This document shows, piece after piece, positions 3,001 through 24,000 of a stretch of 64,000 bases of DNA (its first letter is position 1; each line of letters starts with the position of its first letter). This DNA is from Laetmonice hystrix (lineage: Eukaryota): assembly GCA_965235115.1 (NCBI GenBank), contig OZ249443.1, forward strand, positions 8,308,001 through 8,372,000. The letters run 5' to 3'. The notes beneath the pieces are model-generated. The model was not told the origin of the DNA, searched no databases, and worked only from the letters and a program-made list of their open reading frames with translations. The position numbers were made by a program, and so were the translations under genes.

Positions 3001-6000
3001 GTATGTGCGTGACTGTAGTGACATCCCTATACTGTATGTGCGTGACTGCAGTGACATCCCTATACTGTATGTGCGTGACTGTAATGACATCCCTATACTG
3101 TATGTGCGTGACTGTAGTGACATCCCTATACTGTATGTGCGTGACTGTAGTGACATCCCTATACTGTATGTGCGTGACTGCAGTGACATCCCTATACTGT
3201 ATGTGCGTGACTGCAGTGACATCCCTATACTGTATGTGCGTGACTGTAGTGACATCCCTATACTGTATGTGCGTGACTGCAGTGACATCCCTATACTGTA
3301 TGTGCGTGACTGTAGTGACATCCCTATACTGTATGTGCGTGACTGCCTGTATTGGCACAGGACCAGCACACCATACTGAGGTCCTGGGCGGTGAAAGACT
3401 TCGCGCCGGCAGCTCCACAATACTTACAGATCTTCAGACCAGAGAACAAGTTTCATGTCAAGTTTGCAGGTGAGAATGACATTTACACCAGTCTTGGCAT
3501 CTTGGTTTTATCTGTTCTAAAGGGAAGAATGTTAAATGTACTTGAACCCCAGTAGTGTTACTTTCAATCGTCATATTCTATCTGCTCGAATACTGTTTTA
3601 CGTTTTCCCTCAAGACAAATTACCTTAAAGCAGACTTAGAAAACATTTTATGAATAATTTCTTACAGAATAAATCTAGAAGTATCTTTTTGGACTGATAA
3701 ATCGTCAACATTATCAGAAAGAATATTAATTAGCCTTTCTTTGTCATGATAATATAAGAAATGAGTAAATGAACAAAAATAAACGGAAAGTGCGAAACCA
3801 GGCTGTGTAGAATAGTCTGGGTGTTAGAGATTCTTTATGTCCAGTATCTGCGTGAAATGTACATTTAAAATCTTACATAGAACACCCACGTAATTACACG
3901 CAAACTATAACGAACAGTTTGCCCAGAAATATAAGTTAACACTGATTAATATGTAACCATATATCAGAATCAAAGATGAAGGACTTTGGTGTGACAGGTA
4001 AATTGTCCGTACCTTATATTTTGGTGAAGGCCAGCTTCTACGCTGATGATGACAACATGCTCTCGGTCTAAGTAATTTAACATGATAGAATGATAGTTAA
4101 CATAGCGACAGCCATGTGATGTTCCAACCAGGAATACACTGGAAACATACAGTTTACTATTTGGGTGTAACAAGCTAATGACAATGATGACAATGGAAAC
4201 GCCCCCACATCCACCCCCACATCCACCCGAGCCTATCAAAGCAGCACAAGCATGTTGTAGTGACCTTTGACCCTGATGAGTTAGGGTGAGCTTGACCGCG
4301 TATTTTACGGGCAGGAATTAAGGTTAGTCTTTCCCAGCCATGGAGACGGAAGCAAAGTATCCCAAAACATAGATTAATTGGTGATAAAAAAAACTAGATA
4401 CATAAACATGCTTGCATGAAACGCTTGTTTAGTTCAGGTTAGAGAGCATTGCTTGCATTATTTAGTTACCTAAAGAATCCTCCAACCAACCTATACAGAC
4501 AACTAATGCATCAGTTTTAGCCCTTGAATAAGTTGGTTTAAATATTTTTTTCTGATAGTGACTCCAAAGTTGAGAACAATACTATCTTTTAATTTGGCTC
4601 GAAGTGCTGAATGTTTACAAAACGACGCCAGTGCAGGGACTCTAGAAATACACATTTGGTGCCTGATGGTGTGGTGTCTGAGTTGTTCCGAAGGCCTGGT
4701 TTAACGAACCACCTTGAATTATTTAAAACCTCTACGTTATTAACGCGCACGTGCACAGTTATTATGTATGTTAAACTCTTTGGAAACCTTCCCGCATGCA
4801 CCGCGAATAGTTAAAAGCTTCGGCTGGTAGCGTGCACTAAAATGGATATTTTGAGGACACATTCTGAAATAACGTGAATTTTAGACCCTATGCCTATATG
4901 CCTGCGTGCGTGCTGTCTAGATTATCTACATCATTTTGTTTTCAGTTTAAAGGAGACATAATACTGAAATAAGGTGTGCTTGTTTGGGTGTGTTTTCAGA
5001 GCACGTGGTTTGTGAGGACGAGTTTAAGTACGCCTTGCTTGCCAACAATTGTTTATGTCCCGGCGCGTCGACACTCGTCACGCTGCTTCTACATACGTCA
5101 CGCGGAGCGTAAGTCGTCACGTCTTACCGTCACTACAGCGGCGACATCTGGCGGCGGGGAGCGTGGGGAGGAGAAAGGGGGGGGGGGGTGATCAGGGAAT
5201 GAAGCTTTTAGTTTATACATTTCTCAAGGTACTTAGAAGAAAGAAAACATGATGTTCTTGTAACAGTATACTCACATCCTAAAACAAAATATTCTACACC
5301 ATTAGAAGAATCACATAATTATGGGCCGAGTTGTTGCTCCTACAATTCGATATACTGTGAATGTGTAGAAAGTTGATGAGTTGAGATTTTGTTGTGGTGT
5401 TGACAGAGAGGGCCAGACCTCGTCCGAGGAGTGGATGCGACTCTACGGGAAGTGCTCTGGGAACGAGATCTATCATATTCATCTCGGCGACAGCCAATTT
5501 TTTGGGGAGTACGAGGGAAAAAGCTTCACCTACGCCTCTTTTCATGCACACAGAAAGTAAGACATAGACCACCGATTCTAATTTTATACTTCGACATAGG
5601 TTAAAAAAGGGCACATTTTACACAAAAACGTAAAATAAAGGGCAAAATCTAAAGTGCTTTCATTGAAGTATCTCAGTATCTCTGGAACCCATATGACGTC
5701 ACATTGCTAATTGATGACGTCACAGGTACGGTGTGGCTCTGGTAGGAGTCCAACAGGACAAACCGGGTTCCACCATCCAGCTCAACCCGGGACCCCGCCA
5801 CATCATGAAGAGGACGGACACGTGTTTCTACATGAACATCACCAAGGAGGAAAACTCGGCCTTTATCTTGGCTCACCCTAACCAGGAGAAAGAGGGTAGT
5901 ACGAAACGTACCAGTCCCACTCCGACCACCTCCAATTACTCCAAGGTGGCCTCCATGATCGCCAGTGTCGGTGAGTCTCACGCTCCCCTCCCCCAACCCA

Positions 6001-9000
6001 AACAACCTGTCCCTCAGTCCTCCAACCTCACTTCACTGATTGACACTGAGTTAGATACTCTGGGAGTCATCCACCCACAAATGGTCATGGCGGACAGTGT
6101 GAGTAGCCTCCTCTCCCTACAAAACAGTGACCTTTATAGGAATGGTCAATTTGAGAAATGGAAAAAGCCCTCAATACCCCTTGTTATTTTTGCCATTTTA
6201 TTTTGCGCCGTTCTATTTCTGTTCCGGAACGTGTAGAATAAGTGACAGTTACACAAGAAACAACGGAGGTGTCCTGTGTAGTCAGAATATGGGACAGAGA
6301 CAATAATTATTATTGTGAGTCTGAGAAAATGTACCTTTTCGAATATTTCCATGATCATCCCTGCCTTACTTGTACTGACCATCATGTCTTGACTAGTGTA
6401 CATTCAAGGTGGACTACAGGTGGTTTCACAGTTGGGTGTTATGACTACGACTAGAAAAGACTGGTTTGTCTTACATTGAATTACGTGATAAAATGTCAAA
6501 GGTGTATTGGTGTTGTTACGTATGCCACTGGCTATGGAGAATGGTATCATGTACATGTTAACATCTTGTTGCCTTGAGGTAGTATGTGGACCTTCGGTTC
6601 ACAGCTCCAGTGACGCCTAAAGCTTAATAATAGTATTATCAAGTTGTTTAAGATATTTAATCTTTCTAATACAGGTAATGATATTATTTCAGCCAAACAC
6701 CTGATACTTCATGGCTGACATAAACAAATTTTCAATAAACTTTCAATAATAACAATACTGGGCATTAAACACAAATATATGTGACCTTTTGGGGTTTTTT
6801 TTATCAAAGACTTCTTGATCATGAGATGAAAATAATATCGATCAAGATTAACTGCGAAGTTTAAGAATATGTTGGTAACTGACAGTCCCATACAGATAAC
6901 AGGCTCTGGTAGTACATCTTGACTACTCCGCTAATGAGTGCTTGTTTCATTTCGAATTTTAGTGCAAGCAAGTGTTTCCTTTGCTAATCATGGATTTCTT
7001 TTATCTTTTTATTTAGTGATGCACATATCGCAAGCTTTCGTTAAATCAGTCAAAAAGGACCATCATGTGACTAATGGGAACTATTAAAGAAAACTATAAC
7101 AAAGTTCTTGTTTTCCCTGAAGTCCTGTGACTTGGAACTGGAGTGTGATTGGTTGGTGGTTTCTAGGTGCTGTGGCGTTGGCCGTCAGACAGGACAAGAG
7201 AGGCACTAGGAATGAGATCATAGTGAAGGCAGAATACAACGCAACCCGTTCAGGTTCCCCAACAACCCGCTTCTTCTATAGATTCTCACCACTGTCACCA
7301 GATGGTGCTGCAGTCAATGAGACAATCATAATGGAATCAGCAATCATGACGTTTCGGCAAAGGCATTGGTTGAGGTGTCATCTGGTGATATTTTTTAGGT
7401 TATACATGTATTAGCATACAGTGCCGCCACCTAACGGTGAATCACAAGGCTGCATGTTTTATCGTTGACACCCGTGACATACGTATTGCACCTTTTACAT
7501 TAAAACTATAAAAGTGTACTTTCAATTCGTTTTATTTTAACACCTATAATGATTACATGTTACGTTACACACAATTCATAGTCCGTTTTTGTGAGACTAC
7601 GGCAAGGAGTAATAGAAAGTTCTGGTGGGGAAACCCGGTCGTTCCGACTTTGTATGAGAACTAGGCGATGAAGACTCTCATACTCTCAAAAATAGAAAAT
7701 TACAATTAATAAATAAATGACGTAAAACAAATTCAGTATTTTGTCTAATATTACTGGGTAGGTCGGTAATATCTTCAGAGATAAAGTTCAAGGGTATAGG
7801 GCATTTAAAACCATACTTCAATTGTAATTGACTTTTTTATTATAGTCATCCAGCCACTTTACCGCTTTCCTGGGATCTGCTGAAAAAATAGATCAAATGC
7901 ATGAGTTAATTTCTATTGTCACTTTTTCATTATAGCCATGACCTTGATTAGTTCATTGTTTACATTTTTAAAGCACAAAATAATTTCATTCGGTGAGTTT
8001 TCTTTTTTCAGGTTAGATGTCTCGGTGTATAATTTGTTTGTATGTGCCCCCTCCCCACTTGGCGTTCAGACGCAGAGCCGATCGATGAAGAAGAAAAATG
8101 TGCAGCACCTCGTGATGGTTTTAGAGGATTTACCTGGTCAATAGCCCAAACATTATCACAAACATTTTGGATGACATTTTTTTCAGATTCAACCTTTAAC
8201 CCTGGCAAACGCTGTAAGTTTGATCCTCTCTGGTTTGATCCAACGTGGGCGTCACACTAACCCAGAGATTCTAGAAACCAACAGCCCGTCTCTCATTCCC
8301 AACTCTGCTCATTGGGGTCTCTGCTGGTCGCTCCATTACAGCCACCAACAGAGGCCCGTATGAGGCGGATTTGGCAATGAGACCCGTACGACAGGTGCTG
8401 GCACCTGACGGGGCCTCTACGAACTGGGCCCCGAGCTATACTGGCACCCCACCTGGTGGTGGAATAGTGGGTGGGAATGCGATCACTGAGAGCGGGTTGC
8501 GGCATACTCACAGCTTTATTAATGCTTTACTCATTTCATAAACACTGGAGAACGTCCCAACGTTTGCTTATTCATGCTGTGTTTATCCAAGGACACTTGT
8601 ATTTAGTGCTACTGGAGGTATCTTTTTGCAGAGGAATCAGGATCTCTTGCTAATGACCGGATTTACCATTAGATTCTAGACCAGCTGGTGGTGTGTACAT
8701 GTATTGTCATTAAAGCCGGTCAATGCATTTCATTCCGCGTAGGTTGTGTGTGGAACGAAAGACATGTGCCTACTCTTCAATATGTAAATACATAGACACA
8801 AACGACACAAGTAATTAGTTTGCAAACACACCCACATGTTATATACATAGAAAGGGTTAAACCAAGCTGACTACAGTGCATTAATTATTTGGACGGATAA
8901 TCGGGACAGCAAGCAAATGTTAGTGGTAACAGTTTGAAATGTCAACGTGACCATAGAAGTGCTATCGTCATTGTGACGGTATGTGATGAGTTCGACACTA

Positions 9001-12000
9001 GCACCTTCTCCACTAACGTAACAATCTCATTCCAGGCTCTATATTTCAGAGTGACGGTGATTAATTTGTGAACGCTGAATGAATGAGAGAGTTTTTTGAT
9101 GAAAGGCCGTGAAGCCGGGGGTGTTAAAGTACACCTGGTGGTGACTGTTGGTATAATTATCTATCGTAGAGCGCACGACTCCACCCGAGGGCGAGTTCCG
9201 AATGATGGAGACTTGTTACGGGGCGTCTCATAGGTTACAGATGCCTGGTACTTATAGAAACATTCCTCACCGGTCCTTTCTAACTTTGATCTATCTTTTC
9301 GTTTTTACAAAGTGGTAGACTGCCAGGTAGTCAGATACTCTAGGTAGCTCTAGTTGTGCGTGTCTGTTCGGTGTATGGACATCATGTGTCGGGAAATCGT
9401 TCAACTATCCCGAATGATGAGAGCAATTGCCGACGGGACAATTGTATATCTGGTGTGACGTTTAGTGCTGTGGTTTGACACAGGGTGGCGCTCCTAACTC
9501 TGTCTTTAGCATTTGACCCGGATGTGGTTGACGTTTTCTTCATTGCGTCTCTGTCAAGTCGTGTCCGTTCGTTGCCACATTGCTTTTTTCACTTAGAGAT
9601 GTCTTTTCTGTACATCAAACGTGTCCATGTTAAAGGATTGTTTCAATGAAAAACATCCTTTATTGGGGGAACGCCCCTTAAAGGTAAATTAAGTGCACTT
9701 GTATTGAAATCTGGGCAGTTTGGAAGATGGCAGGATCACTGCAGAGAAATTGCAGTTTAAAAACTACTGAAAAAAAACCACTTTGAAAAGGCGTGTAAAA
9801 TGGAGTACCCCAATAGGCCTATACCCGGTCTATGCTTGTAAAATTGCGTAAAATGCAAGAATCTCGGCATCTTCCCATTGGTTTTCTCCCCGTTGATTTT
9901 CAATGATATTGTTCCCACAGGTAACATAGTGAAGTGTAAGTCACCCCACTTTCCCAGCTTCATTCGCCTCAATTCTACTTCCTGCTTATTACAACCTTTT
10001 ATGTTGCATGGGCCATCTTGACCTTTCACTTTGTACTTTATGAGAAATGAGACTGAGTTATGTGTTGTATAACAGAGCTCGGCAAAGCAACCCTTATACG
10101 TGTAATTCATTTGAACCAGCCTAAAAAAAACAACTTAACATTTGGAAACTTGGTAATGGAAGAGATAATAAGGAACTTGCCATCTTGTGTATTGAATTTC
10201 CTCCAAGCGATCGTCTCGACATTGTATGTTTTCATGTTGCATCCCTCACTCGGGATGTTACATCTGTCAAGGGTGTTTCATTTCCTTCTCCTTTCTCTTC
10301 AAGTGTCCTATTTGTTCTTTCTTTCTGTCTTTCTGCGGTCAGGCGTGGCCCAGTCGGAGGAGGAGACTATCCCTCCACCCCCTACCTGTCCTCAGTTAAA
10401 CCTGCCTATTGCCAACCATGGTAAAAAACAACCTTGACCTTTCACCTTGAGTATTTGTTGCATGTGTGATAGAAATCAGAACGTCTGAGTTTTGTTGAGA
10501 ATCGTCTCGATCTTACGGCTTGCTTCATTACGCCATCGTCAGTCTTATATTTCACCATACTTTGTCTCGGCCGCTTGTATATGTGTATAGGTACATTGAA
10601 TCGTGAATTTTCTTTGCCATAAATGACCTTGACTTGCAGTAAATGACCTTGACTTTGAAGTGCCTTACGTCATACACAGTGACACGCGCCTCGTTCGGGG
10701 GCAGCCAGTAACAACATGCCTTAACACTTTGTCACATGCGCAGGCCATGCACACACATCGAATTGCACTCCTCAACGTGGACCACAATCAACTTTTAACA
10801 AATAGGACAACACCCTTCCCCCAAATAAAATCTCTTTTTGAACTTGAATTAAGCAGCAAGCTAAGGAATAATGAAATGTCAATGCGGGCAGAAGAGATTT
10901 AAGAAGGCATGAACCCCCATCGTTTGCCTACAACTGATGATACCCAAATTGAACGTAACTCGACGGTCAGCGATACAAATTAATTTTCTGACATTACTTT
11001 TTATTATTATAATTTATTGATTTAAATAGGAAGCTTAAGGAGAAAGAAAACGATTGATAAAGACTCCATCCGTAGTGGAAGAAGTTCTATTAAGGAGAGT
11101 CCCGATGGCCAATCTTACTCACCAGACGGCAGCACGCCAACGATCGTGCTGCCACCTGGAGAAAACAACCAGGCTGCCATGGAAACAAGTATTTTCATTT
11201 TCCCATTGATTGGTTTGAGTTATTTATGGTTAAGACGTATAACTCTTGGATTGATGCGTGCCACGACAGTGTGTTTTCTCACCAGATTTTGGCCCAGTTG
11301 GTTTTAAGTGAGTTTAAGCCTGAGGTGTCTTGGCTTTGATCAGCGTTTGGAATGCACCACTAACATGTGTTCCATAGCAACAGCACGCAAGGATATCCAA
11401 ATACAGCATACAGTTGTAGGGTAGCCTATATGGACAAACCAAAAGGGGAAATAAGAAAAATATTGTTATTACTTAGAAGATAGGAGTTAGCCTATCCGGC
11501 GCCTTGGTGTATGAAATGAGACGCGGAGACGTTGGGTCAGCCGTGCCATGCAGTGCATAAGGGAAGGGAGTAAGGTGTCATACAGCCTCCTGACTAGCTA
11601 TTATCTCCCCTAACCCATCAGAGTATGAGCAATCCCAATTAATATTCTTCATTGCTAGCCCTGTGCATCCGCCTTAACCTGATCAGTCCTACCTAATCCA
11701 CAACCACACATGGATCCACCAGAGAGCTTTTAAGAATGGGCTAGTATAGCTGGTTGCCGTAACAACACTATTATATATTATAACATGTACTCAAGGTTTT
11801 TCCAATTTGGTTGTTTCCACACATTGACACAGCGTTCGTAGTGGCATGTATTGGGACATCTTCTGGTTCAACTCACGTGTTCATGCTTCACCTAAATCCT
11901 GATATTAAGGCATTGTTGACTGCACTGAGATGTGAAGTAGTGTATGAACAAAGAACCTGTTTGTGTCTTGCCAATCATGGTAGTCAAAACACGGTAGTGC

Positions 12001-15000
12001 TGCATTGTAGAATAATGCTTCTGTTGTTAGAAAATGGTTCATGTTCATTTACAGATATGATCAATAATGGGTTAATATAATACATAATCGTCAAGAGCTT
12101 TTTTTGCCAGACGAAAAATATTTGATTACCTTTTTAGTAGATATTCCTTAAACAACTGTAATAAAGTTAATATTGATTTAGTAATGATGTCGTATTCTTC
12201 AAGCGAGAACAAGGAAAGTATAAAACGACAGGATCGCGGCAGTTATTATTTTAGAAAAATATTTTTGTATAAATAATTGCAGCCCGTTTCAGATGGAAGT
12301 GAAAGCCATAAAGGGATATGTTTTATTCGGAGTCAGTCCTGACTAGACCAATAATGGCGAGGACGGGATTGGTAGTTTGGAGTGGTAGGTTGACGTCTGT
12401 TTCTATGGTTACAGGTTCTATGGTTTCCGACAAGGCACAGAAGATAGAACTACACCAAACCCACAGTAACAACCTCCTGGAGCTTCCCAAGGGAATGTCA
12501 CTGGCGGTCAGCAATTTGTCCAATTTGTCTTTTCCGATTTCATTTTAACAGTTTAAAGATCACGACAAAGATGTTTTTTGGGCAAAATCCTTCAGCATGC
12601 CAATTATGTATGATAAACTCTGCTAATCTAAAACCACAAAGATGAAATATAAAAGTAGATGCTTTGCTGAATGCATAAATGACTTTTGTGGACTCTCAAG
12701 GTTGATGAGGGCAGTGGGTTATGTTTGTAGAACCTACAGAAGAGGCCGAGTATCGCGCCGGTACCGGCGGTGTTAGAGGCTAACGGTATCGACATCACTG
12801 TGGAGTCGGAGACTGAGACAGAGAGCGACTCAGACCAAGGTGATGAGGAGGACACCGTGCCTTGGGGAACCCCCGTACCCGAGTGAGTATGACGTCATTA
12901 TCCACCCCATGAGATGAGGTTAGCGATATTTTGTTGAGACTGGTGTCAAGTAATTGACAGACACGCCGGCATTATGATACAGATGGTGTACCTATACAGA
13001 TCACAGAAACATCGAAATGCTGTACATGTATATATATATATTATGAGACCATGATATAGAGGACACAGACTGAAACTGGCTTCCAGGTTTTTTCATGCCA
13101 GACCACAGCCAACCTACATTATCAGTCTCAATTCTAGAAAAAAAACCAGGTTTGAGTTGTACCCAAATATGATTTTTTTACCAAGAACATTTTGATGGAT
13201 GTGACTGGTATGCAGAAGACGGTATATCGAATGTGTTCTGTTTTAGTAGCCAAGACAAGCTTGTGTAAGTATGACAGCCCGTCGTTGTTCAGTACAACAT
13301 TTCCATATAACGCAACATCACAATCACTAAACCAGTTAGGACAGTCATCGGCACCCTGAAATGATCAGTTACCTTTCCTAGAGCAAGCAAAAACACACAC
13401 ACACAACAAGCAGACAGACGATGTCATCCATTATTTTGTCACCGTCAGTGAAAACTTAATTTCCTCCATTATTCTATTTTAAAGTGTAGCCCGCTATTGA
13501 GTGTTGAATTATTTATACCGGGAGTGTATGTTTGGTAGTTGTCGAGGTATTCGACTTGCGTGGTGTGGTTTCTCCGGTAGAGATGCCTTGGTTTGTAACT
13601 GGTCCGATTTTAACTGTGCATGTATGAGTACACACGTACATTATACACACACGTATCTATACGTAACACTTGTATACTAGATGTTGGAGGTGTGCTTTAC
13701 ATAGTAACCCACACAAACCCACACATACAAAATCAATATGCTCAAAGTCATGTTAAATAAACAGTTCTGTTTGCATGACATTTTAGCCGACGTTTTTTAT
13801 AACTAGTTTGTTAAAGTGGTTGCACAGATATTAGTTCTTACCAACAATAAATGTCAGATTTTTCTTTAAATAAACAGTGCATGATGGATTTAATTTTGGA
13901 ACTTTGGATGTGCATGAATGTATATGACAGGGGTGTTGTTTTTCACAATATACACACTGTGTTACCATGGATACATAACTATGTATTGTAGAGGATGGGA
14001 GGTGCCAGTATTGGGTTTTCATTAGTCAAGTGTTAATGTTGATCCTTTCTCCGCCATCCTAGCCCTATACCAGTGTGTGGAGCAGGTGGCAGGTACTATA
14101 ACTGGCCCAATGAAAACCCAACTATATACTGGCTGGCCATTCAGGTATGACCCCAAGATCAGGCCTAGGGAGTCTTCTGAAAACATTTTCTAAAGTTTTC
14201 TGCCTATATAAAGCACTAGAAACAAAACGGTCAATAGTTGTTTGATCCATAAAAGAGAAATGCGACTTACATACTGTACTTCAAGGGTCACCAGAGAAAA
14301 TACCGACGGAATATTTTAAGACAATGAGAGCGATAAACCACAGTGCGCTTATTTCATTTTCTCAAGTATGATTACTATTATAGCGTAACGGTCCTATGGA
14401 ACTTCAGCTTGGGACACCCCATAGCACAACTAAACACATCGTGGTTGTCCTAATATTTAGTGTTTCTCTTTATAATTGCTTATTGAACATTATTGACTGC
14501 GCTTCTGGCAGTCATGTGCCAACACATGGAAGAAATAATGAAGATAGTTATTGATATTGTTATCTGTTAACTGATCACTTTGACAATATCACACTTTTCC
14601 ATGGTTAGAGATTAAAGAATTGCAAGTATCTGTTATTATGACTACTTTAGATAGTTTATTGTTCCACATAATTTATGCCGTTTCTTTTCATTTTTTGCAT
14701 TATTGTTTCATTGTTTTGCTAGCCGTGACCTGGAGATGATAACATTACGTCATATTTTTGTTTTTATTAATAATATAACTGATGGTTCAAAGTTGTGTTT
14801 TTTCCAAACAGTTATGTGAAAGGCTTTCCCCCTACTCCCCCCTACATTGGCTGCAGCCCGAGGCTATGTCACCTACTGAAGAACAAACAGCCATTGTGTT
14901 GCCTACAGCTTTCAAAGGTAGCTATGGCAAACACGGCAAGGTCAACGCATATCGCCATGGCGCCAAGGTCAACGAAGGTCATAGAACGGAAAATTTAGAA

Positions 15001-18000
15001 GTTTGGGTGTAACTGTGTTTCAGCTGGTTACATGGGTATAGCTTAAGCGATCCAGTGGGAACTTTACGTTGACTTCGAACGGCACAGTTCTTGGTGACAT
15101 GTTGATTCTTGGAGAGTCCTTCCTTTCTGTCAGCTTTTTATTTTACCAAGCCTTCGGTTAGTTGGACTGTTTGACTGCAATCACAAGGGAGAAACGATTC
15201 AATGAACTGCCGAATGAAATACAAACCTAGAGGATATGTACACATCAGTGCATTATGTATCATGAAAATATTGTTACTGTAAGTCAATAGGACAGAGGAA
15301 ATGGGTTGTCCCTTGTGAAGGCGGCTAAAACAGATCTACTGCTTTCTGCACTTGCATGGTGAGCACATGTGCCCCCTCCCACGACCCCCACCGACGCTTT
15401 CAGTTTCCGTATCCTTCCTTCACAGGGCAAGGTCCCGTAGTAGTAAGTCGCGGTGGCACCAGGTGGCAGCGCGCGCGCTTATGTGTCACAGTGTATGTTG
15501 CCTCAGTGGGTGTTGATAGGGCGGCCGGGCATGCCTCATCACTCATCTCTATATTTTCCTCTTAGTTATGTGCGCGGGTTCCCACCCACAACTCCTTACA
15601 TCGGTACAAGTCCAACCGTCGTACACTTGCTGCGCGACAAGCGACCGTTGTGTTGCCTGCAACTGGCCAAGGTACAAACTGCCAGACTTATCATAAAATT
15701 ATCGATATCTTCTCAGAATATTTTACATATAATAATTGGCATTATGATTTGCATTAAAAACAATACCGCGCTGAAGATTGCTTCGAATTTGCAAAATTTT
15801 GAGCGTTTGTTTTTTCTCCCTTTTTGATCTATATTGAAGACCCCATGCAACCTTTTCCCTTTTTCTGCATGACTGTTATGGTTAACAAAAATGATACTAA
15901 TCATGGCATATAGCAACCTCCCAACCAACCAACCACTACCGTACTTTGTGACCAGCAAGACGTCTTGTATTGAATTCCAGCATGGGTGTTTTAACATACC
16001 CTGAACCCATGGCGAACAAGCTATTCAAGTTATTTTGACGATATAAAAGCAGTTTACGCGGCAAGTTACTGAGAAGAAGGGGGGGGGATACGAATAAAAA
16101 GAATATTGAAAAGACTACACTGACATACGGTATATGGAATATTATAGAAAATATAATGACAGCTGGTAGAGTTGAGAGCATCAGTAGTCAGTCATGAGGT
16201 GTCATATCTGTTTTGAGACTACCAAGGGGAACAGAGAAGGCGGAAGTTGGAGGTTAGATCAGCTACCTTGTTTTGTAGAAGCTTCGGAAACCCTTACTTC
16301 AATGTTCCTGGGGTTTGAGAAGATATGCACCTGTGCGTCCTTAAAGATGCGAATGTTTGGTTTTTATCAAAGATTGACTGGAATAAGTGTTTTTTGGCAC
16401 TGTTTGTGGTTGCGCCAAATGCATGTACGCCTGGTGGTTAAGTGACTTGTGTCTCGATGTTCTCCTTTCATGTTCTCCTCACACTGCGCCATACCTAATG
16501 TATACCCCTACACGTATCTTATCTGCTCTGCCTCGTTTGCGTGTGATAAAAAGATTTCTACATGTCCACTATTACTGAGTGACCCAGTCACAGACCTGTG
16601 TGACTGAAAATACAAACCTCTGAATAAATACAGAATTAAATGTTATTAACGTAAATGAGAGTTAACGGGTCGACCCAGACAAAACACTTTGTATAGAAAG
16701 GAAAATAATTGACAAATTGACAACAGTTTTGATCACCATCCTCACATTTGTCAATAGGTTGCATTTATAATTAATTATAGTATACTAATAATAAATCGAT
16801 GGCTATGTAAGAAGTAGGGTAAAAACCGTGAAACTTTAGAAAGACGGTTTTTGAGTGTATTTTTGTTGGTATTGGCAGGCTTGTGAACACTGCAGTTTTA
16901 AACACGCCAAGGAATACAACTGGCCGAATCGGGCCATCATTGTGGCGGCAGATTATGCAAGTAATGGTCTCTATAACTTCATCGTGCCATTACGCTCGCA
17001 CGCCCGGCCTAAACACACGCTCAACCCAATCGTACTACTACTAGAGCGACCGTAAGCAACATCTTATTGATTACTTTTAAACATGTATCTCATTAATTAC
17101 TTGGCTTGATGAATTCCGGAAATTTGAAATTGCCATTCCACGCGCAGATTCATTGAGGATAAAAGCAGAATGTGCAAGCTGACAGAAAAGTTAAGAATTT
17201 TAAAGATTCTGTAAAATTTCAGGGCCACCTTTTCTTTTATAATTATAAATGATTGTTTGTTGACCTCTCTGACCTAATGACACGGGTGTCAGAGAACAAC
17301 CTTTGCTGACCGTCATTTCGTGTTCTACCGACAGGCCGGACCAGAGTTTCCTAGAGACGATTTGTTACTTTCCCATGGTTTACTGGATGATCGGATCTAT
17401 AGACTGGTTAGTATCCACAGTTTAAGTCCTCAGTGGGACCAGGGGCCAGGGTCCTGGTAGCTCACGTTAATGACGCCCCAGTATAACTATCTCGGCGTTG
17501 TGTCGAGGTGGTCAGTTTAACCTCTAGCGGAAACCGGAGTACCGGATGATAACCACCGATCTGCAGCAAGTGTCTTTTTACGTTAGAATAATTTGACCTT
17601 CAGGCATATTAGATAACGGCGAGAATTACCACAGCATTATGGTAAAGCTATGAGGAGTAATTAAGTTTATACGTGTACAATGTTACTTAAGAGCAAACAC
17701 TTTTTTCGAGGAAACCTTATAAAACAAGATAATAATGCCGGTTTAATGTTTGGATACTCAGTTTAGATGACCTGCTACGTGCGGGTATCAACCTGGCCGA
17801 TAACGTGGTGATTGTGAACAAGGAGAGTTCTAACTCAGCCGAGGAGGACACCTTGGCCGACTGTAACACCATCGTGGCTGTACAGACTATATTCAGGTGG
17901 GTTATATCCTTAACAGAAAGCTTCTATATCCCTGACTGAAAACTGCTATATAACTTACAGAAAACTGCTATATCCCTAACAGAAAACTTCTATATCCTGA

Positions 18001-21000: not shown

Positions 21001-24000
21001 CCTGTCACAGTGCCCGGTTCTCACGGTCCTTCCGTCTCTATGTATACGTGTAGGCAGGTGATTCCCATCCCCCGGTACCGGCTAGGGGTCCTCCTGTCAC
21101 AGTGCCCGGTTCTCACGGTCCTTCCGTCTCTATGTATACGTGTAGGCAGGTGATTCCCATCCCCCGGTACCGGCTAGGGTCCTCCTGTCACAGTGCCCGG
21201 TTCTCACGGTCCTCTCGTCTCTATGTATAGGCCTAGGTGTAGGCAGGTGATCCCCATCCCCCGGTACCGGCTAGGGGTCCTCTTGTGACACTGACAGTGC
21301 CCGGTTCTCACGGTCCTCTCGTCTCTATGTATAGGCCTAGGTGTAGGCAGGTGATCCCCATCCCCCGGTACCAGCTAGGGGTCCTCTTGTGACAGCGCCC
21401 GGTTCTCACGGTCCTCCCGTCTCTATGTATGCGTGTAGGCAGGTGGTCCCCATCCCCCGGTACCGGCTAGGGGTCCTCCTGTGACAGTGCCCGGTTCTCA
21501 CGGTCCTCTCGTCTCTATGTATATGTGTAGGCAGGTGATCCCCATCCCCCGGTACCGGCTAGGGGTCCTCCTGTGACACTGACAGCGCCCAGTTCTCACG
21601 GTCCTCTCGTCTCTATGTATACGTGTAGGCAGGTGATTCCCATCCCCCGGTACCGGCTAGGGGTCCTCCTGTGACAGTGCCCGGTTCTCACGGTCCTCTC
21701 GTCTCTATGTATACGTGTAGGCAGGTGATTCCCATCCCCCGGTACCGGCTAGGGGTCCTCCTGTGACAGTGCCCGGTTCTCACGGTCCTCTCGTCTCTAT
21801 GTATAAATTTTCAGAAAGAGAAGGAGCGAGGGTCACATCTTTACTACATGTTCCGGCTGCCGTTCGCTGCCGGTAATGTGTTCAGTGCCAGTATGCTGGA
21901 CACACTTCTATACCAGGTACGACTTCAGGTCGGGTACTTCTATACACGCTTTGTACGGGGACATGGAATCTTTAACAAATTCTGCTCTAAAAGTTCGAAG
22001 ACAATTCATGTGTCTTTAAAAATCCCTTTGGTCCTTGTAAGCTTTTGTCTTTTGTTAAAGTTAAGCTGAGGTCAACTTAATGCATGTTATCCTACCCCGA
22101 CGGACCGTTTGGATGGAGGAGATGCCGTTAAAAACTTGTATTTTATCATCAAGAAATCCTGTATAATATATATGTCTATAGTAGTGGATGTAAAACCAAC
22201 CTGTGAGTATTAATCTTAATTTGTTTTTTTAACCCAGGCCTTTGTAAAGGATTACCTCATTACATTTGTACGTCTCCTGCTCGGCATCGACCAAGCTGTG
22301 GGCTCAGGCCACCTCTCCTGTGTGAGTGCAACCATTATCATTTTGCCATTCTCACTATGTGCCAACTAATTTACTCAACTCTGTGGGTAAGGAGAAAACG
22401 AGAGTGTACAGCAGGATGCGGTATAATCTTTCCTGCTGATCAGAATTCTGGAACCCCCTGTAGATATCAACTTCACCCTGTACCTGGAACCCCCTGTAGA
22501 TATCAACTTCACCCTGTACCTGGAACCCCCTGTAGATATAAACTTCACCCTGTACCTGGAACCCCCTGTAGATATAAACTTCACCCTATACCTGGAACCC
22601 CCTGTAGATATCAACTTCACCCTGTACCTGGAACCCCCTGTAGATATCAACTTCACCCTGTACCTGGAACCCCCTGTAGATATCAACTTCACCCTGTACC
22701 TGGAACCCCCTGTAGATATCAACTTCACCCTGTACCTGGAACCCCCTGTAGATATCAACTTCACCCTGTACCTGGAACCCCCTGTAGATATCAACTTCAC
22801 CCTGTACCTGGAACCCCCTGTAGATATCAACTTCACCCTGTACCTGGAACCCCCTGTAGATATAAACTTCACCCTGTACCTGGAACCCCCTGTAGATATC
22901 AACTTCACCCTGTACCTGGAACCCCCTGTAGATATAAACTTCACCCTGTACCTGGAACCCCCTGTAGATATCAACTTCACCCTGTACCTGGAACCCCCTG
23001 TAGATATCAACTTCACCCTGTACCTGGAACCCCCTGTAGATATCAACTTCACCCTGTACCTGGAACCCCCTGTATAAACTTCACCCTGTACCTGGAACCC
23101 CCTGTATAAACTTCACCCTGTACCTGGAACCCCCTGTAGATATCAACTTTACCCTGTACCTGGAACCCCCTGTATCAACTTCACCCTGTACCTGGAACCC
23201 CCTGTAGATATCAACTTTACCCTGTACCTGGAACCCCCTGTAGATATCAACTTTACCCTGTACCTGGAACCCCCTGTATCAACTTCACCCTGTACCTGGA
23301 ACCCCCTGTATAAACTTCACCCTGTACCTGGAACCCCCTGTATCAACTTCACCCTGTACCTGGAACCCCCTGTATAAACTTCACCCTGTACCTGGAACCC
23401 CCTGTAGATATCAACTTCACCCTGTACCTGGAACCCCCTGTAGATATCAACTTCACCCTGTACCTGGAACCCCCTGTATAAACTTCACCCTGTACCTGGA
23501 ACCCCCTGTATCAACTTCACCCTGTACCTGGAACCCCCTGTATAAACTTCACCCTGTACCTGGAACCCCCTGTATAAACTTCACCCTGTACCTGGAACCC
23601 CCTGTATCAACTTCACCCTGTACCTGGAACCCCCTGTAGATATCAACTTCACCCTGTACCTGGAACCCCCTGTAGATATCAACTTCACCCTGTACCTGGA
23701 ACCCCCTGTAGATATCAACTTCACCCTGTACCTGGAACCCCCTGTAGATATCAACTTCACCCTGTACCTGGAACCCCCTGTAGATATCAACTTCACCCTG
23801 TACCTGGAACCCCCTGTAGATATCAACTTCACCCTGTACCTGGAACCCCCTGTATAAACTTCACCCTGTACCTGGAACCCCCTGTAGATATCAACTTCAC
23901 CCTGTACCTGGAACCCCCTGTAGATATCAACTTCACCCTGTACCTGGAACCCCCTGTAGATATCAACTTCACCCTGTACCTGGAACCCCCTGTAGATATC

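What the first reader, a model, noticed from the sequence alone, without database searches (positions are those of the whole stretch)
8070..11188. Array of phase-1 symmetric cassette exons and microexons in the RCK1-RCK2 linker
Seen: at least five separate AG...GT units (27 or 144, 21, 15, 78 and 159 nt), all multiples of 3, all phase 1-1 and stop-free, lie between the constitutive exons ending 5970 and starting 12415. Several have strong signals (GTAAGT donors, a CACTAAC branch point). Established: this linker is the splice hotspot of BK channels (STREX site), and neural microexons are a conserved bilaterian program. Inference: with the two mutually exclusive pairs and the downstream microexons, the gene could yield hundreds of isoforms, a BK-like combinatorial code in a Slo2 channel.
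Basis: partly seen in the sequence, partly recalled or inferred. Interest (0 to 1): 0.72.

Follow-up and report, generated by a model that had tools for sequence, protein, structure and literature searches.

The report
Optional linker exons in Slo2 channel gene
A spiralian invertebrate's sodium-activated potassium channel gene (Slo2/KCNT) has one conserved and probably two more in-frame exons in the flexible linker between its two regulatory domains, an ordinary feature already annotated in ribbon worms, while the proposed tiny microexons are no better than chance.

Summary
They are multiples of 3, phase 1-1 and stop-free. That criterion is not selective: about 450-480 such units lie between 5970 and 12415, and the antisense strand gives splice scores as good.

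It is conserved with synonymous changes in two related contigs. It resembles a cassette that RefSeq shows both included and skipped in the ribbon worm Lineus longissimus.

- **78 nt (10343-10420) and 159 nt (11030-11188):** both look like coding exons. Codon bias is specific to the required frame, GC content steps up against the flanks, and splice signals are adequate. I estimate about 70% and 55% that they are real. Neither has a detectable counterpart in any of five relatives.
- **144 nt version:** intron-like.
- **15, 21 and 27 nt units:** at chance level and not conserved.

No RNA run exists for this organism, so inclusion or skipping cannot be shown.

RefSeq already lists isoforms up to X30 for Lineus Slo2, including a +/-59 aa linker cassette, and a +/-45 aa cassette in Tubulanus. 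The combinatorial idea is therefore plausible but already annotated. The scan noted this same stretch once before without follow-up.

The parts
5726..5970 (+). Constitutive Slo2 exon at the end of RCK1; ends in phase 1 with a GTGAGT donor
   Evidence: The translation aligns to chicken Slo2.2 residues 570-630 and human KCNT1 591-645. 276 hits in the representative library. Single copy in the genome.
7167..7253 (+).
   Evidence: Orthologs lie at L001 1318-1425 (108 nt) and L003 2613-2732 (120 nt), all 3n and all ending CAG|GTTC. The first 9 codons encode identical amino acids, with 7 synonymous third-base changes against L001. A similar unit is in L002 (10905-10997) and in the Lineus RefSeq cassette KQGTVAMVVKAG....
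8070..8186 (+). Part specific to the 144-nt version: most likely intron
   Evidence: Codon score is negative in all frames and there is no GC step. Two amino-acid-changing variants at 8072 and 8132 occur in the individual's own DNA contigs. No counterpart in relatives.
8187..8213 (+). 27-nt candidate microexon (T-rich tract, GTAAGT donor): unresolved, chance-level
   Evidence: Splice score 9.7, but comparable small units occur on the antisense strand. No 27-nt counterpart in L001, L002 or L003.
8283..8510 (.). Dispersed repeat element inside the intron; it produces a false exon-like unit at 8342-8470
   Evidence: At least 49 other matches across the genome in both orientations. Depth rises and loose ends appear at 8291-8335 in the DNA contigs.
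9036..9056 (+). 21-nt candidate microexon with CACTAAC at 9011-9017: unresolved, chance-level
   Evidence: Splice score 7.4. No counterpart in relatives. The codon score has no power at this length.
9921..9935 (+). 15-nt candidate microexon (cacag|...|GTAAGT) with TGCATG 71 nt downstream: unresolved
   Evidence: Splice score 9.7. TGCATG at 10005. No TGC near the acceptor and no counterpart in relatives.
10343..10420 (+). Probable coding exon, 78 nt, phase 1-1 (peptide [25 protein letters not shown]), with a long pyrimidine tract, a GAG-repeat purine run and TGCATG 40 nt downstream
   Evidence: Highest codon score of 267 units of 45 nt or more, and second-highest splice score. Frame-specific score of 11.1 against 0.9 and -1.2. 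GC is 0.59 against 0.44 and 0.39 in the flanks. None of 5,847 intronic stop-free windows reaches its score. Single copy.
11030..11188 (+). Probable coding exon, 159 nt, phase 1-1 (basic, Ser/Thr/Pro-rich peptide [19 protein letters not shown]...)
   Evidence: Codon score is 7.8 in the required frame against -10.1 and -5.3. GC is 0.48 against 0.27 and 0.37. Top 3% of intronic windows. Passes the joint splice-plus-codon filter. Unique in the genome. Weak similarity to the orthologous linker exon of L002 (shuffle p=0.016, not robust).
12415..12506 (+). Main linker exon (starts in phase 1, ends in phase 0), ortholog of the ...LELPKG... exon of other spiralians
   Evidence: Shuffle tests against the L002 and L003 exons give p of 0.002 or less. 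tblastn with the Lineus and Tubulanus linkers hits it.
12731..12882 (+). Conserved exon encoding [14 protein letters not shown]...
   Evidence: tblastn hits from many Slo2 proteins. The two variants seen in it (12766, 12820) are both synonymous.

Best explanation
The stretch 5971-12414 of this single-copy Slo2/KCNT gene is not one intron dotted with five optional mini-exons. It is a chain of phase-1 introns separated by symmetric (3n) exons that encode pieces of the disordered tether between RCK1 and RCK2.

One exon, 7167-7253, is certainly real. Selection maintains its first ten residues. It corresponds to a cassette that is included or skipped in annotated Lineus transcripts.

Two more exons, 10343-10420 (78 nt) and 11030-11188 (159 nt), are probably real, lineage-specific coding exons. 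Every exon here starts and ends in phase 1, so any subset can be spliced in without changing the frame. Inclusion would lengthen the linker by 29, 26 and 53 residues. It would add acidic/proline-rich or basic, Ser/Thr-rich (RRKKT, RSGRSS, SP/TP) segments.

By inference only, weak donors (GTTCCC, GTATTT) and a downstream UGCAUG suggest regulated rather than constitutive use. The 144-nt version and the 15, 21 and 27-nt units are best read as chance AG...GT pairs.

Shown: the exons' existence, phase, conservation (7167) and coding-like statistics (78, 159). Inferred: that they are alternatively used, and their effect on gating or phosphorylation.
For: - **Conservation of 7167-7253.** DNA z-score 15 against L001. 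Identical first residues with synonymous changes in L001 and L003. All three orthologs are 3n with the same CAG|GTTC donor.
- **Precedent in relatives.** Lineus isoforms with and without a 59-aa insert, and Tubulanus with and without a 45-aa insert, at the same phase-1 site.
- **78- and 159-nt units.** Codon log-odds are highest in the required frame. GC steps at both borders match those of known exons. They rank in the top <0.1% and 3% of intronic stop-free windows.
- **Joint filter.** A splice-plus-codon filter passes three loci in the sense phase-1 scan: these two and a repeat. It passes about 8 loci in roughly 150 kb-equivalents of controls, so about 0.35 would be expected here.
- **Method check.** The same method ranks the RefSeq-annotated cassette first in both Tubulanus and Lineus.
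- **Copy number and motif.** Both units are single copy. TGCATG lies 40 nt downstream of the 78-nt unit.
Against: - No RNA run holds this locus, so neither inclusion nor skipping is observed.
- Neither the 78- nor the 159-nt unit has a detectable counterpart in L001 (closest relative, 3.8 kb downstream of its 7167 ortholog), L002, L003, Tubulanus or Lineus.
- The filter thresholds were set after seeing the candidates.
- The filter produced antisense false positives in Lineus nearly as good as the 78-nt unit. It also misses true exons with weak donors (7167 itself, Lineus cassette 1).
- The codon model was trained on only 779 codons.
- The variant data have no power for these units.
Confidence: 0.5

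Rival explanations
1. Only 7167-7253 is a real exon. Everything on the reader's list, including the 78- and 159-nt units, is a chance AG...GT pair in a plain 5.2-kb intron.
For: About 450-480 formally equivalent units exist. The antisense strand gives similar splice scores. No unit is conserved in any of five relatives. The joint filter gives false positives in Lineus antisense sequence and in repeats.
Against: Frame-specific codon bias and GC steps coincide with the proposed splice sites for both units. About 0.35 passes are expected by chance and two non-repeat loci are observed. Relatives do carry cassettes in this intron.
Confidence: 0.25
2. The 78- and 159-nt units (and 7167-7253) are real but constitutive in this species. 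The linker is simply longer here and there is no isoform diversity at this site.
For: The 78-nt unit has strong splice signals (score 11.4). Linker length varies widely between species, from 43 to over 100 residues.
Against: The orthologous-type cassette is skipped in Lineus X27, and the Tubulanus cassette is skipped in X2. Donors of 7167 and 159 are weak. From general knowledge, exons without counterparts in relatives are usually alternatively used.
Confidence: 0.15
3. One reading: at least five independently optional cassettes, including 15-, 21- and 27-nt neural microexons, that together give a large combinatorial isoform set.
For: GTAAGT donors at 8214 and 9936, CACTAAC before the 21-nt unit, and TGCATG 71 nt after the 15-nt unit. 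Lineus Slo2 is annotated with isoforms up to X30.
Against: Small units with equal or better splice scores occur on the antisense strand. None has a counterpart of the same length in L001, L002 or L003. There is no TGC motif near their acceptors. The 15 Lineus and 3 Tubulanus isoforms inspected show no microexon at this site, only 45-59 aa inserts. The 144-nt version looks intronic.
Confidence: 0.07

Closest known systems
RefSeq isoforms of 'potassium channel subfamily T member 2-like' in the nemerteans Lineus longissimus (X1-X30) and Tubulanus polymorphus (X1-X3)
   Same: Same gene family, same phase-1 intron after ...KVASMIASV, and symmetric cassettes that are either present or absent (59 aa in Lineus, 45 aa in Tubulanus). 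The second Lineus cassette begins GTVAMVVKAG, like the window's AVALAVRQD exon.
   Different: Apart from that short motif, the cassette sequences are unrelated to the window's 78- and 159-nt units. Those isoforms are models in a public annotation. The window's organism has no transcript data available here.
BK (Slo1) channel splice site C2 / STREX insert in the RCK1-RCK2 linker
   Same: Same architectural position: optional in-frame inserts in the flexible linker between the two RCK domains of a Slo-family channel (own knowledge for BK; position in Slo2 shown).
   Different: A different gene, and no sequence relation was tested or expected. STREX is a cysteine-rich insert of about 58-59 aa (own knowledge). 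The window's units are acidic/proline-rich or basic/Ser-rich with at most one cysteine.
Characterised mammalian Slack (KCNT1) isoforms Slack-A/Slack-B
   Same: Alternative transcripts of a Slo2 gene that change channel behaviour (PMC3850776).
   Different: Those isoforms differ at the N-terminus through alternative promoters, not in the RCK linker.

Membership tests
Slo2 / KCNT sodium-activated K+ channel gene | Exons encode the RCK gating-ring sequence homologous to KCNT1 | tested here: met
   Exon 5726-5970 aligns to solved KCNT1 chains (E 1e-16). 19 further exons in the window match Slo2 proteins at 60-89% identity. Orthologs carry Pfam Slo-like_RCK, BK_channel_a and Ion_trans_2.
Cassette (skipped/included) exon | AG/GT-bounded, length 3n, frame preserved whether in or out | tested here: met
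   Met by 7167-7253, 10343-10420, 11030-11188 and all the small units. About 450 chance units also meet it.
Cassette (skipped/included) exon | Transcripts with and without the exon in the same species | not testable with these tools
   No RNA run holds the locus; only DNA contigs of one sample do. Seen only in relatives' RefSeq models.
Cassette (skipped/included) exon | Coding constraint or conservation of the exon | tested here: inconclusive
   Met for 7167-7253. For the 78- and 159-nt units there is coding-like composition but no ortholog in five relatives.
Neural microexon (30 nt or less, SRRM4/nSR100-type) | UGC-containing enhancer close to the 3' splice site | tested here: not met
   No TGC within 60 nt upstream of the 15- and 21-nt units, and none in the 60 nt before 8187 (read).
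Neural microexon (30 nt or less, SRRM4/nSR100-type) | Conservation of the microexon and its length across related species | tested here: not met
   No unit of the same length with a similar peptide in L001, L002 or L003. No hits in the Tubulanus or Lineus introns. The relatives are distant, so this is weak evidence.
Neural microexon (30 nt or less, SRRM4/nSR100-type) | Neural-specific inclusion | not testable with these tools
   No RNA data.
BK STREX-type insert | Cysteine-rich insert of about 58-59 aa in the RCK1-RCK2 linker | tested here: not met
   The position is analogous, but the peptides of the 78- and 159-nt units have one and zero cysteines. This is an analogy of place, not membership.

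The most novel reading that the evidence does not exclude
All listed units, microexons included, are independently optional. With the two mutually exclusive pairs and the tail cassettes, this single-copy Slo2 gene would then encode hundreds of channel variants, with a lineage-specific, fast-evolving set of linker inserts that differs even from the closest sequenced relative.
Probability: 0.06. Interest if true: 0.5.

Novelty: new member of a known kind. Interest (0 to 1): 0.3.

Why it matters
The RCK1-RCK2 linker is where BK channels are tuned by optional inserts. For Slo2 channels, only N-terminal isoforms have been characterised functionally in the review I consulted. Public annotations of ribbon worms already show optional linker exons. 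This locus therefore adds another example and a corrected gene model: one missed conserved exon and two probable new exons. It does not add a new principle. Its practical value is for annotating this genome and for choosing RT-PCR targets if the species is studied physiologically.

Tried and rejected
- **RNA evidence.** The look-up of sequencing runs returned only three DNA-like contig sets of one sample. Laying them gave variants but no joints. There were too few variants to test the 78- and 159-nt units: none falls in them, about 2 would be expected, and 14 variants were not listed.
- **Rfam.** Nothing in 5000-13500.
- **Transcript-derived fragments.** All short database fragments containing the 5726 exon are genomic read-through. 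Only two long gene models are spliced.
- **Extending the closest relative's contig.** A second run's contig (L008) ends earlier than L001. A protein search with the ORF around exon 12415 found no candidate.
- **My first idea about 7167.** I first took 7167-7253 for a decayed copy of exon 5726. I rejected this once relatives showed it matches the VALELQ/VAMVV linker exon type.
- **Possible homologies.** A DP.W motif after 8213 resembles the Tubulanus cassette, but this is chance (p=0.05, with an equal antisense hit). LPIAN(H/Y) at L001 1918-1944 is not in a phase-1 unit. The similarity of the 159-nt unit to the L002 linker exon (p=0.016) is not robust, because the intron-like 144-nt unit scored as well in the same test.
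- **Filter hits in a control intron.** Units at 21054-21388 looked like extra exons but lie in a tandem repeat and match no homolog.
- **Rbfox motif.** TGCATG near two candidates is only marginal (my calculation: 2 of 4 motifs fall in about 9% of the interval, p about 0.04). There is no consistent pattern in relatives.
Full report
**What is there.** The window carries a single-copy Slo2/KCNT gene on the + strand. Exon 5726-5970 encodes [12 protein letters not shown]...KVASMIASV and ends after the first base of a codon. Exon 12415-12506 starts with two bases that complete a codon. Exon 12731-12882 encodes the widely conserved [14 protein letters not shown] segment. The first exon aligns to residues 570-630 of chicken Slo2.2 and 591-645 of human KCNT1. 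In orthologs this follows the first Slo-like RCK and BK_channel_a domains. 'RCK1-RCK2 linker' is therefore the right place name.

**Check of the observation.**
- 8070-8213 or 8187-8213
- 9036-9056
- 9921-9935
- 10343-10420
- 11030-11188

The criterion is very permissive, however. I counted 448-484 AG...GT, 3n, phase-1 open units in the interval. The antisense strand of the same interval gives four distinct units scoring 9 or more, one of them 15.2, against five on the sense strand. Good-looking splice motifs around a short open 3n segment are thus expected by chance here, especially for 15-30 nt units.

**A missed exon.** Public fragments carrying the 5726 exon led to five related genomic loci:
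- L001, a Logan contig of the closest relative, 88% amino-acid identity in that exon
- L002 and L003, environmental contigs at about 77-79%
- the RefSeq-annotated genes of Tubulanus polymorphus (L005) and Lineus longissimus (L006)

Beyond the 5726 exon, the only island conserved between L001 and the window is 7146-7209 (z = 15). It is the start of an exon at 7167-7253. Its length is 87 nt in the window, 108 nt in L001 and 120 nt in L003. All three are phase 1-1 and all end CAG|GTTC. The first nine or ten residues, AVALAVRQD, are identical, while seven of nine codons differ at the third base between the window and L001. That is the signature of a protein-coding exon under selection. L002 has a similar 93-nt unit (AVAIASVKNHK...). 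In Lineus, the second of two annotated cassettes starts GTVAMVVKAG.

**What relatives show about the site.** The database holds RefSeq isoform models of this gene for many spiralians.
- **Lineus longissimus.** Isoforms are numbered up to X30, in a cluster of 32 sequences. Of the 15 I inspected, 14 carry a 59-aa, two-exon insert between ...ASMIASV and GTVALELQH, and X27 lacks it. These isoforms also differ at the N-terminus, at a mutually exclusive exon at the start of RCK2, at a tail cassette region and at the C-terminus.
- **Tubulanus polymorphus.** X1 and X3 carry a 45-aa insert at the same place and X2 lacks it.

Optional, symmetric, phase-1 exons at exactly this position, and combinatorial diversity of a Slo2 gene, are thus already present in public annotation. 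In the review I consulted, the functionally characterised Slack isoforms are N-terminal.

No RNA run holds the locus, so I used three indirect tests.

1. *Homology.* None of the units has a counterpart in L001 (which covers 3.8 kb beyond its 7167 ortholog), in the complete orthologous introns of L002, L003, Tubulanus and Lineus, or in 150 Slo2 fragments and proteins. The relatives are distant: about 78% DNA identity even in the highly conserved exon. This argues only weakly against lineage-specific exons.

2. *Coding statistics.* I used a codon log-odds score trained on 779 codons of this gene against its introns.
   - The 78-nt unit is above all 5,847 intronic open windows of the same length.
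   - The 159-nt unit is in the top 3%.
   - These compare with 0.4% for exon 12415 and 5% for exon 7167.
   - The 144-nt unit and a 57-nt unit with perfect splice motifs score like intron.
   - For both the 78- and 159-nt units, the score is high only in the frame required by phase 1. GC content steps up at the proposed borders, as it does at known exons. The 144-nt unit shows neither feature.

3. *Joint filter* (splice score 4 or more, codon score 3 or more, length 45 nt or more).
   - It passes three loci in the sense, phase-1 scan: the 78-nt unit, the 159-nt unit and a unit inside a dispersed repeat.
   - Across other phases, the antisense strand, four other introns and the two annotated relatives, it passes about eight loci in roughly 150 kb-equivalents, several of them in repeats. 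About 0.35 would therefore be expected here.
   - The same procedure ranks the RefSeq cassette first in both Tubulanus and Lineus.
   - It misses exons with weak donors and gave one antisense false positive in Lineus almost as good as the 78-nt unit.
   - The thresholds were chosen after I had seen the candidates.

I put the 78-nt unit at about 70% and the 159-nt unit at about 55% to be real exons.

**The small units.** For 15, 21 and 27 nt, the codon score has no power. Splice scores are matched by antisense controls. No TGC element lies near their acceptors and no relative has a matching unit. The inspected Lineus and Tubulanus isoforms show no microexon at this site. A TGCATG lies 71 nt downstream of the 15-nt unit and another 40 nt downstream of the 78-nt unit. 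That is two of the four in the interval, which is marginal (about p = 0.04 by my calculation) and was noticed after the fact. I give each microexon roughly 10-25%.

**The individual's own DNA.** Contigs of the one available sample show about 54 single-base differences and 12 indels over 6 kb.
- Two differences fall in the part specific to the 144-nt version, and both change the amino acid.
- Two fall in exon 12731 and both are synonymous.
- Among the 40 listed differences, none falls in 7167-7253, the 78-nt unit or the 159-nt unit. The region 9227-10944 has almost no variation at all, so this carries no weight.

**How it most likely works.** All exons in this chain begin and end in phase 1. 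Most junctions recreate a glycine codon (the 159-nt exon ends in A, giving AGT Ser before exon 12415). Any combination therefore stays in frame.
- **Shown:** the existence and conservation of 7167-7253, and the coding-like nature of the 78- and 159-nt units.
- **Inferred:** that they are optional, by analogy with Lineus and Tubulanus and from their weak donors. Also inferred is that they tune the length, charge and phosphorylation of the flexible tether between the two halves of the gating ring. The 159-nt peptide carries RRKKT, RSGRSS and three Ser/Thr-Pro sites.

**Verdict.** This is an ordinary kind of feature, partly real. The specific list is about one-third credible, and the best exon was missed. 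The organism's phylum is unresolved: its Slo2 protein is about equally similar (75-76%) to those of nemerteans, a chiton and a bivalve.

Noticed in passing
window 14822-14917 and 15576-15671: Both copies of the exon at the start of RCK2 match the same residues of homologs. The same duplicated pair exists in Tubulanus (L005 35627-35728 and 36734-36835) and in Lineus (L006 66483-66593 and 69658-69789). Lineus isoform X2 uses one copy and the other 14 listed isoforms use the other, so RefSeq annotates the pair as mutually exclusive in a relative.
   Followed up: partly
window 5971-6236: The frame of exon 5726 stays open for 88 codons past its donor, with exon-like GC content (0.53) and a phase-1-compatible GT at 6097. 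It is not conserved in L001, so it is probably chance, but an alternative downstream donor cannot be excluded.
   Followed up: partly
window 8283-8390: Short dispersed repeat with at least 49 other matches across the genome in both orientations (MITE-like). It creates an exon-like open unit at 8342-8470.
   Followed up: partly
window 8218-8233: A 15-nt deletion allele in the individual's DNA removes one copy of a tandem GTTTGATCC... duplication just after the GTAAGT at 8214. The donor motif itself is unchanged.
   Followed up: no
window 21054-21388 and 22357-23109: Tandem repeats with long open frames inside Slo2 introns. The units at 21231-21284 and 21335-21388 pass an exon filter but match no homolog.
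   Followed up: partly
whole window, + strand: TGCATG occurs 41 times on the + strand, against 23 for its reverse complement and about 16 expected for a random hexamer in 64 kb. This is a sense-strand excess of the Rbfox-type motif.
   Followed up: no
L001 2637-2747 and 3617-3697: The closest relative's intron also contains two exon-like phase-1 units (111 and 81 nt) that pass the same filter. Their sequences are unrelated to the window's 78- and 159-nt units.
   Followed up: no
L003 4151-4325 and L002 12625-12910: In these relatives the exons equivalent to 12415 and 12731 are fused, and in L002 they also include the VALELQ start. The intron 12507-12730 is therefore absent from these two relatives.
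   Followed up: partly
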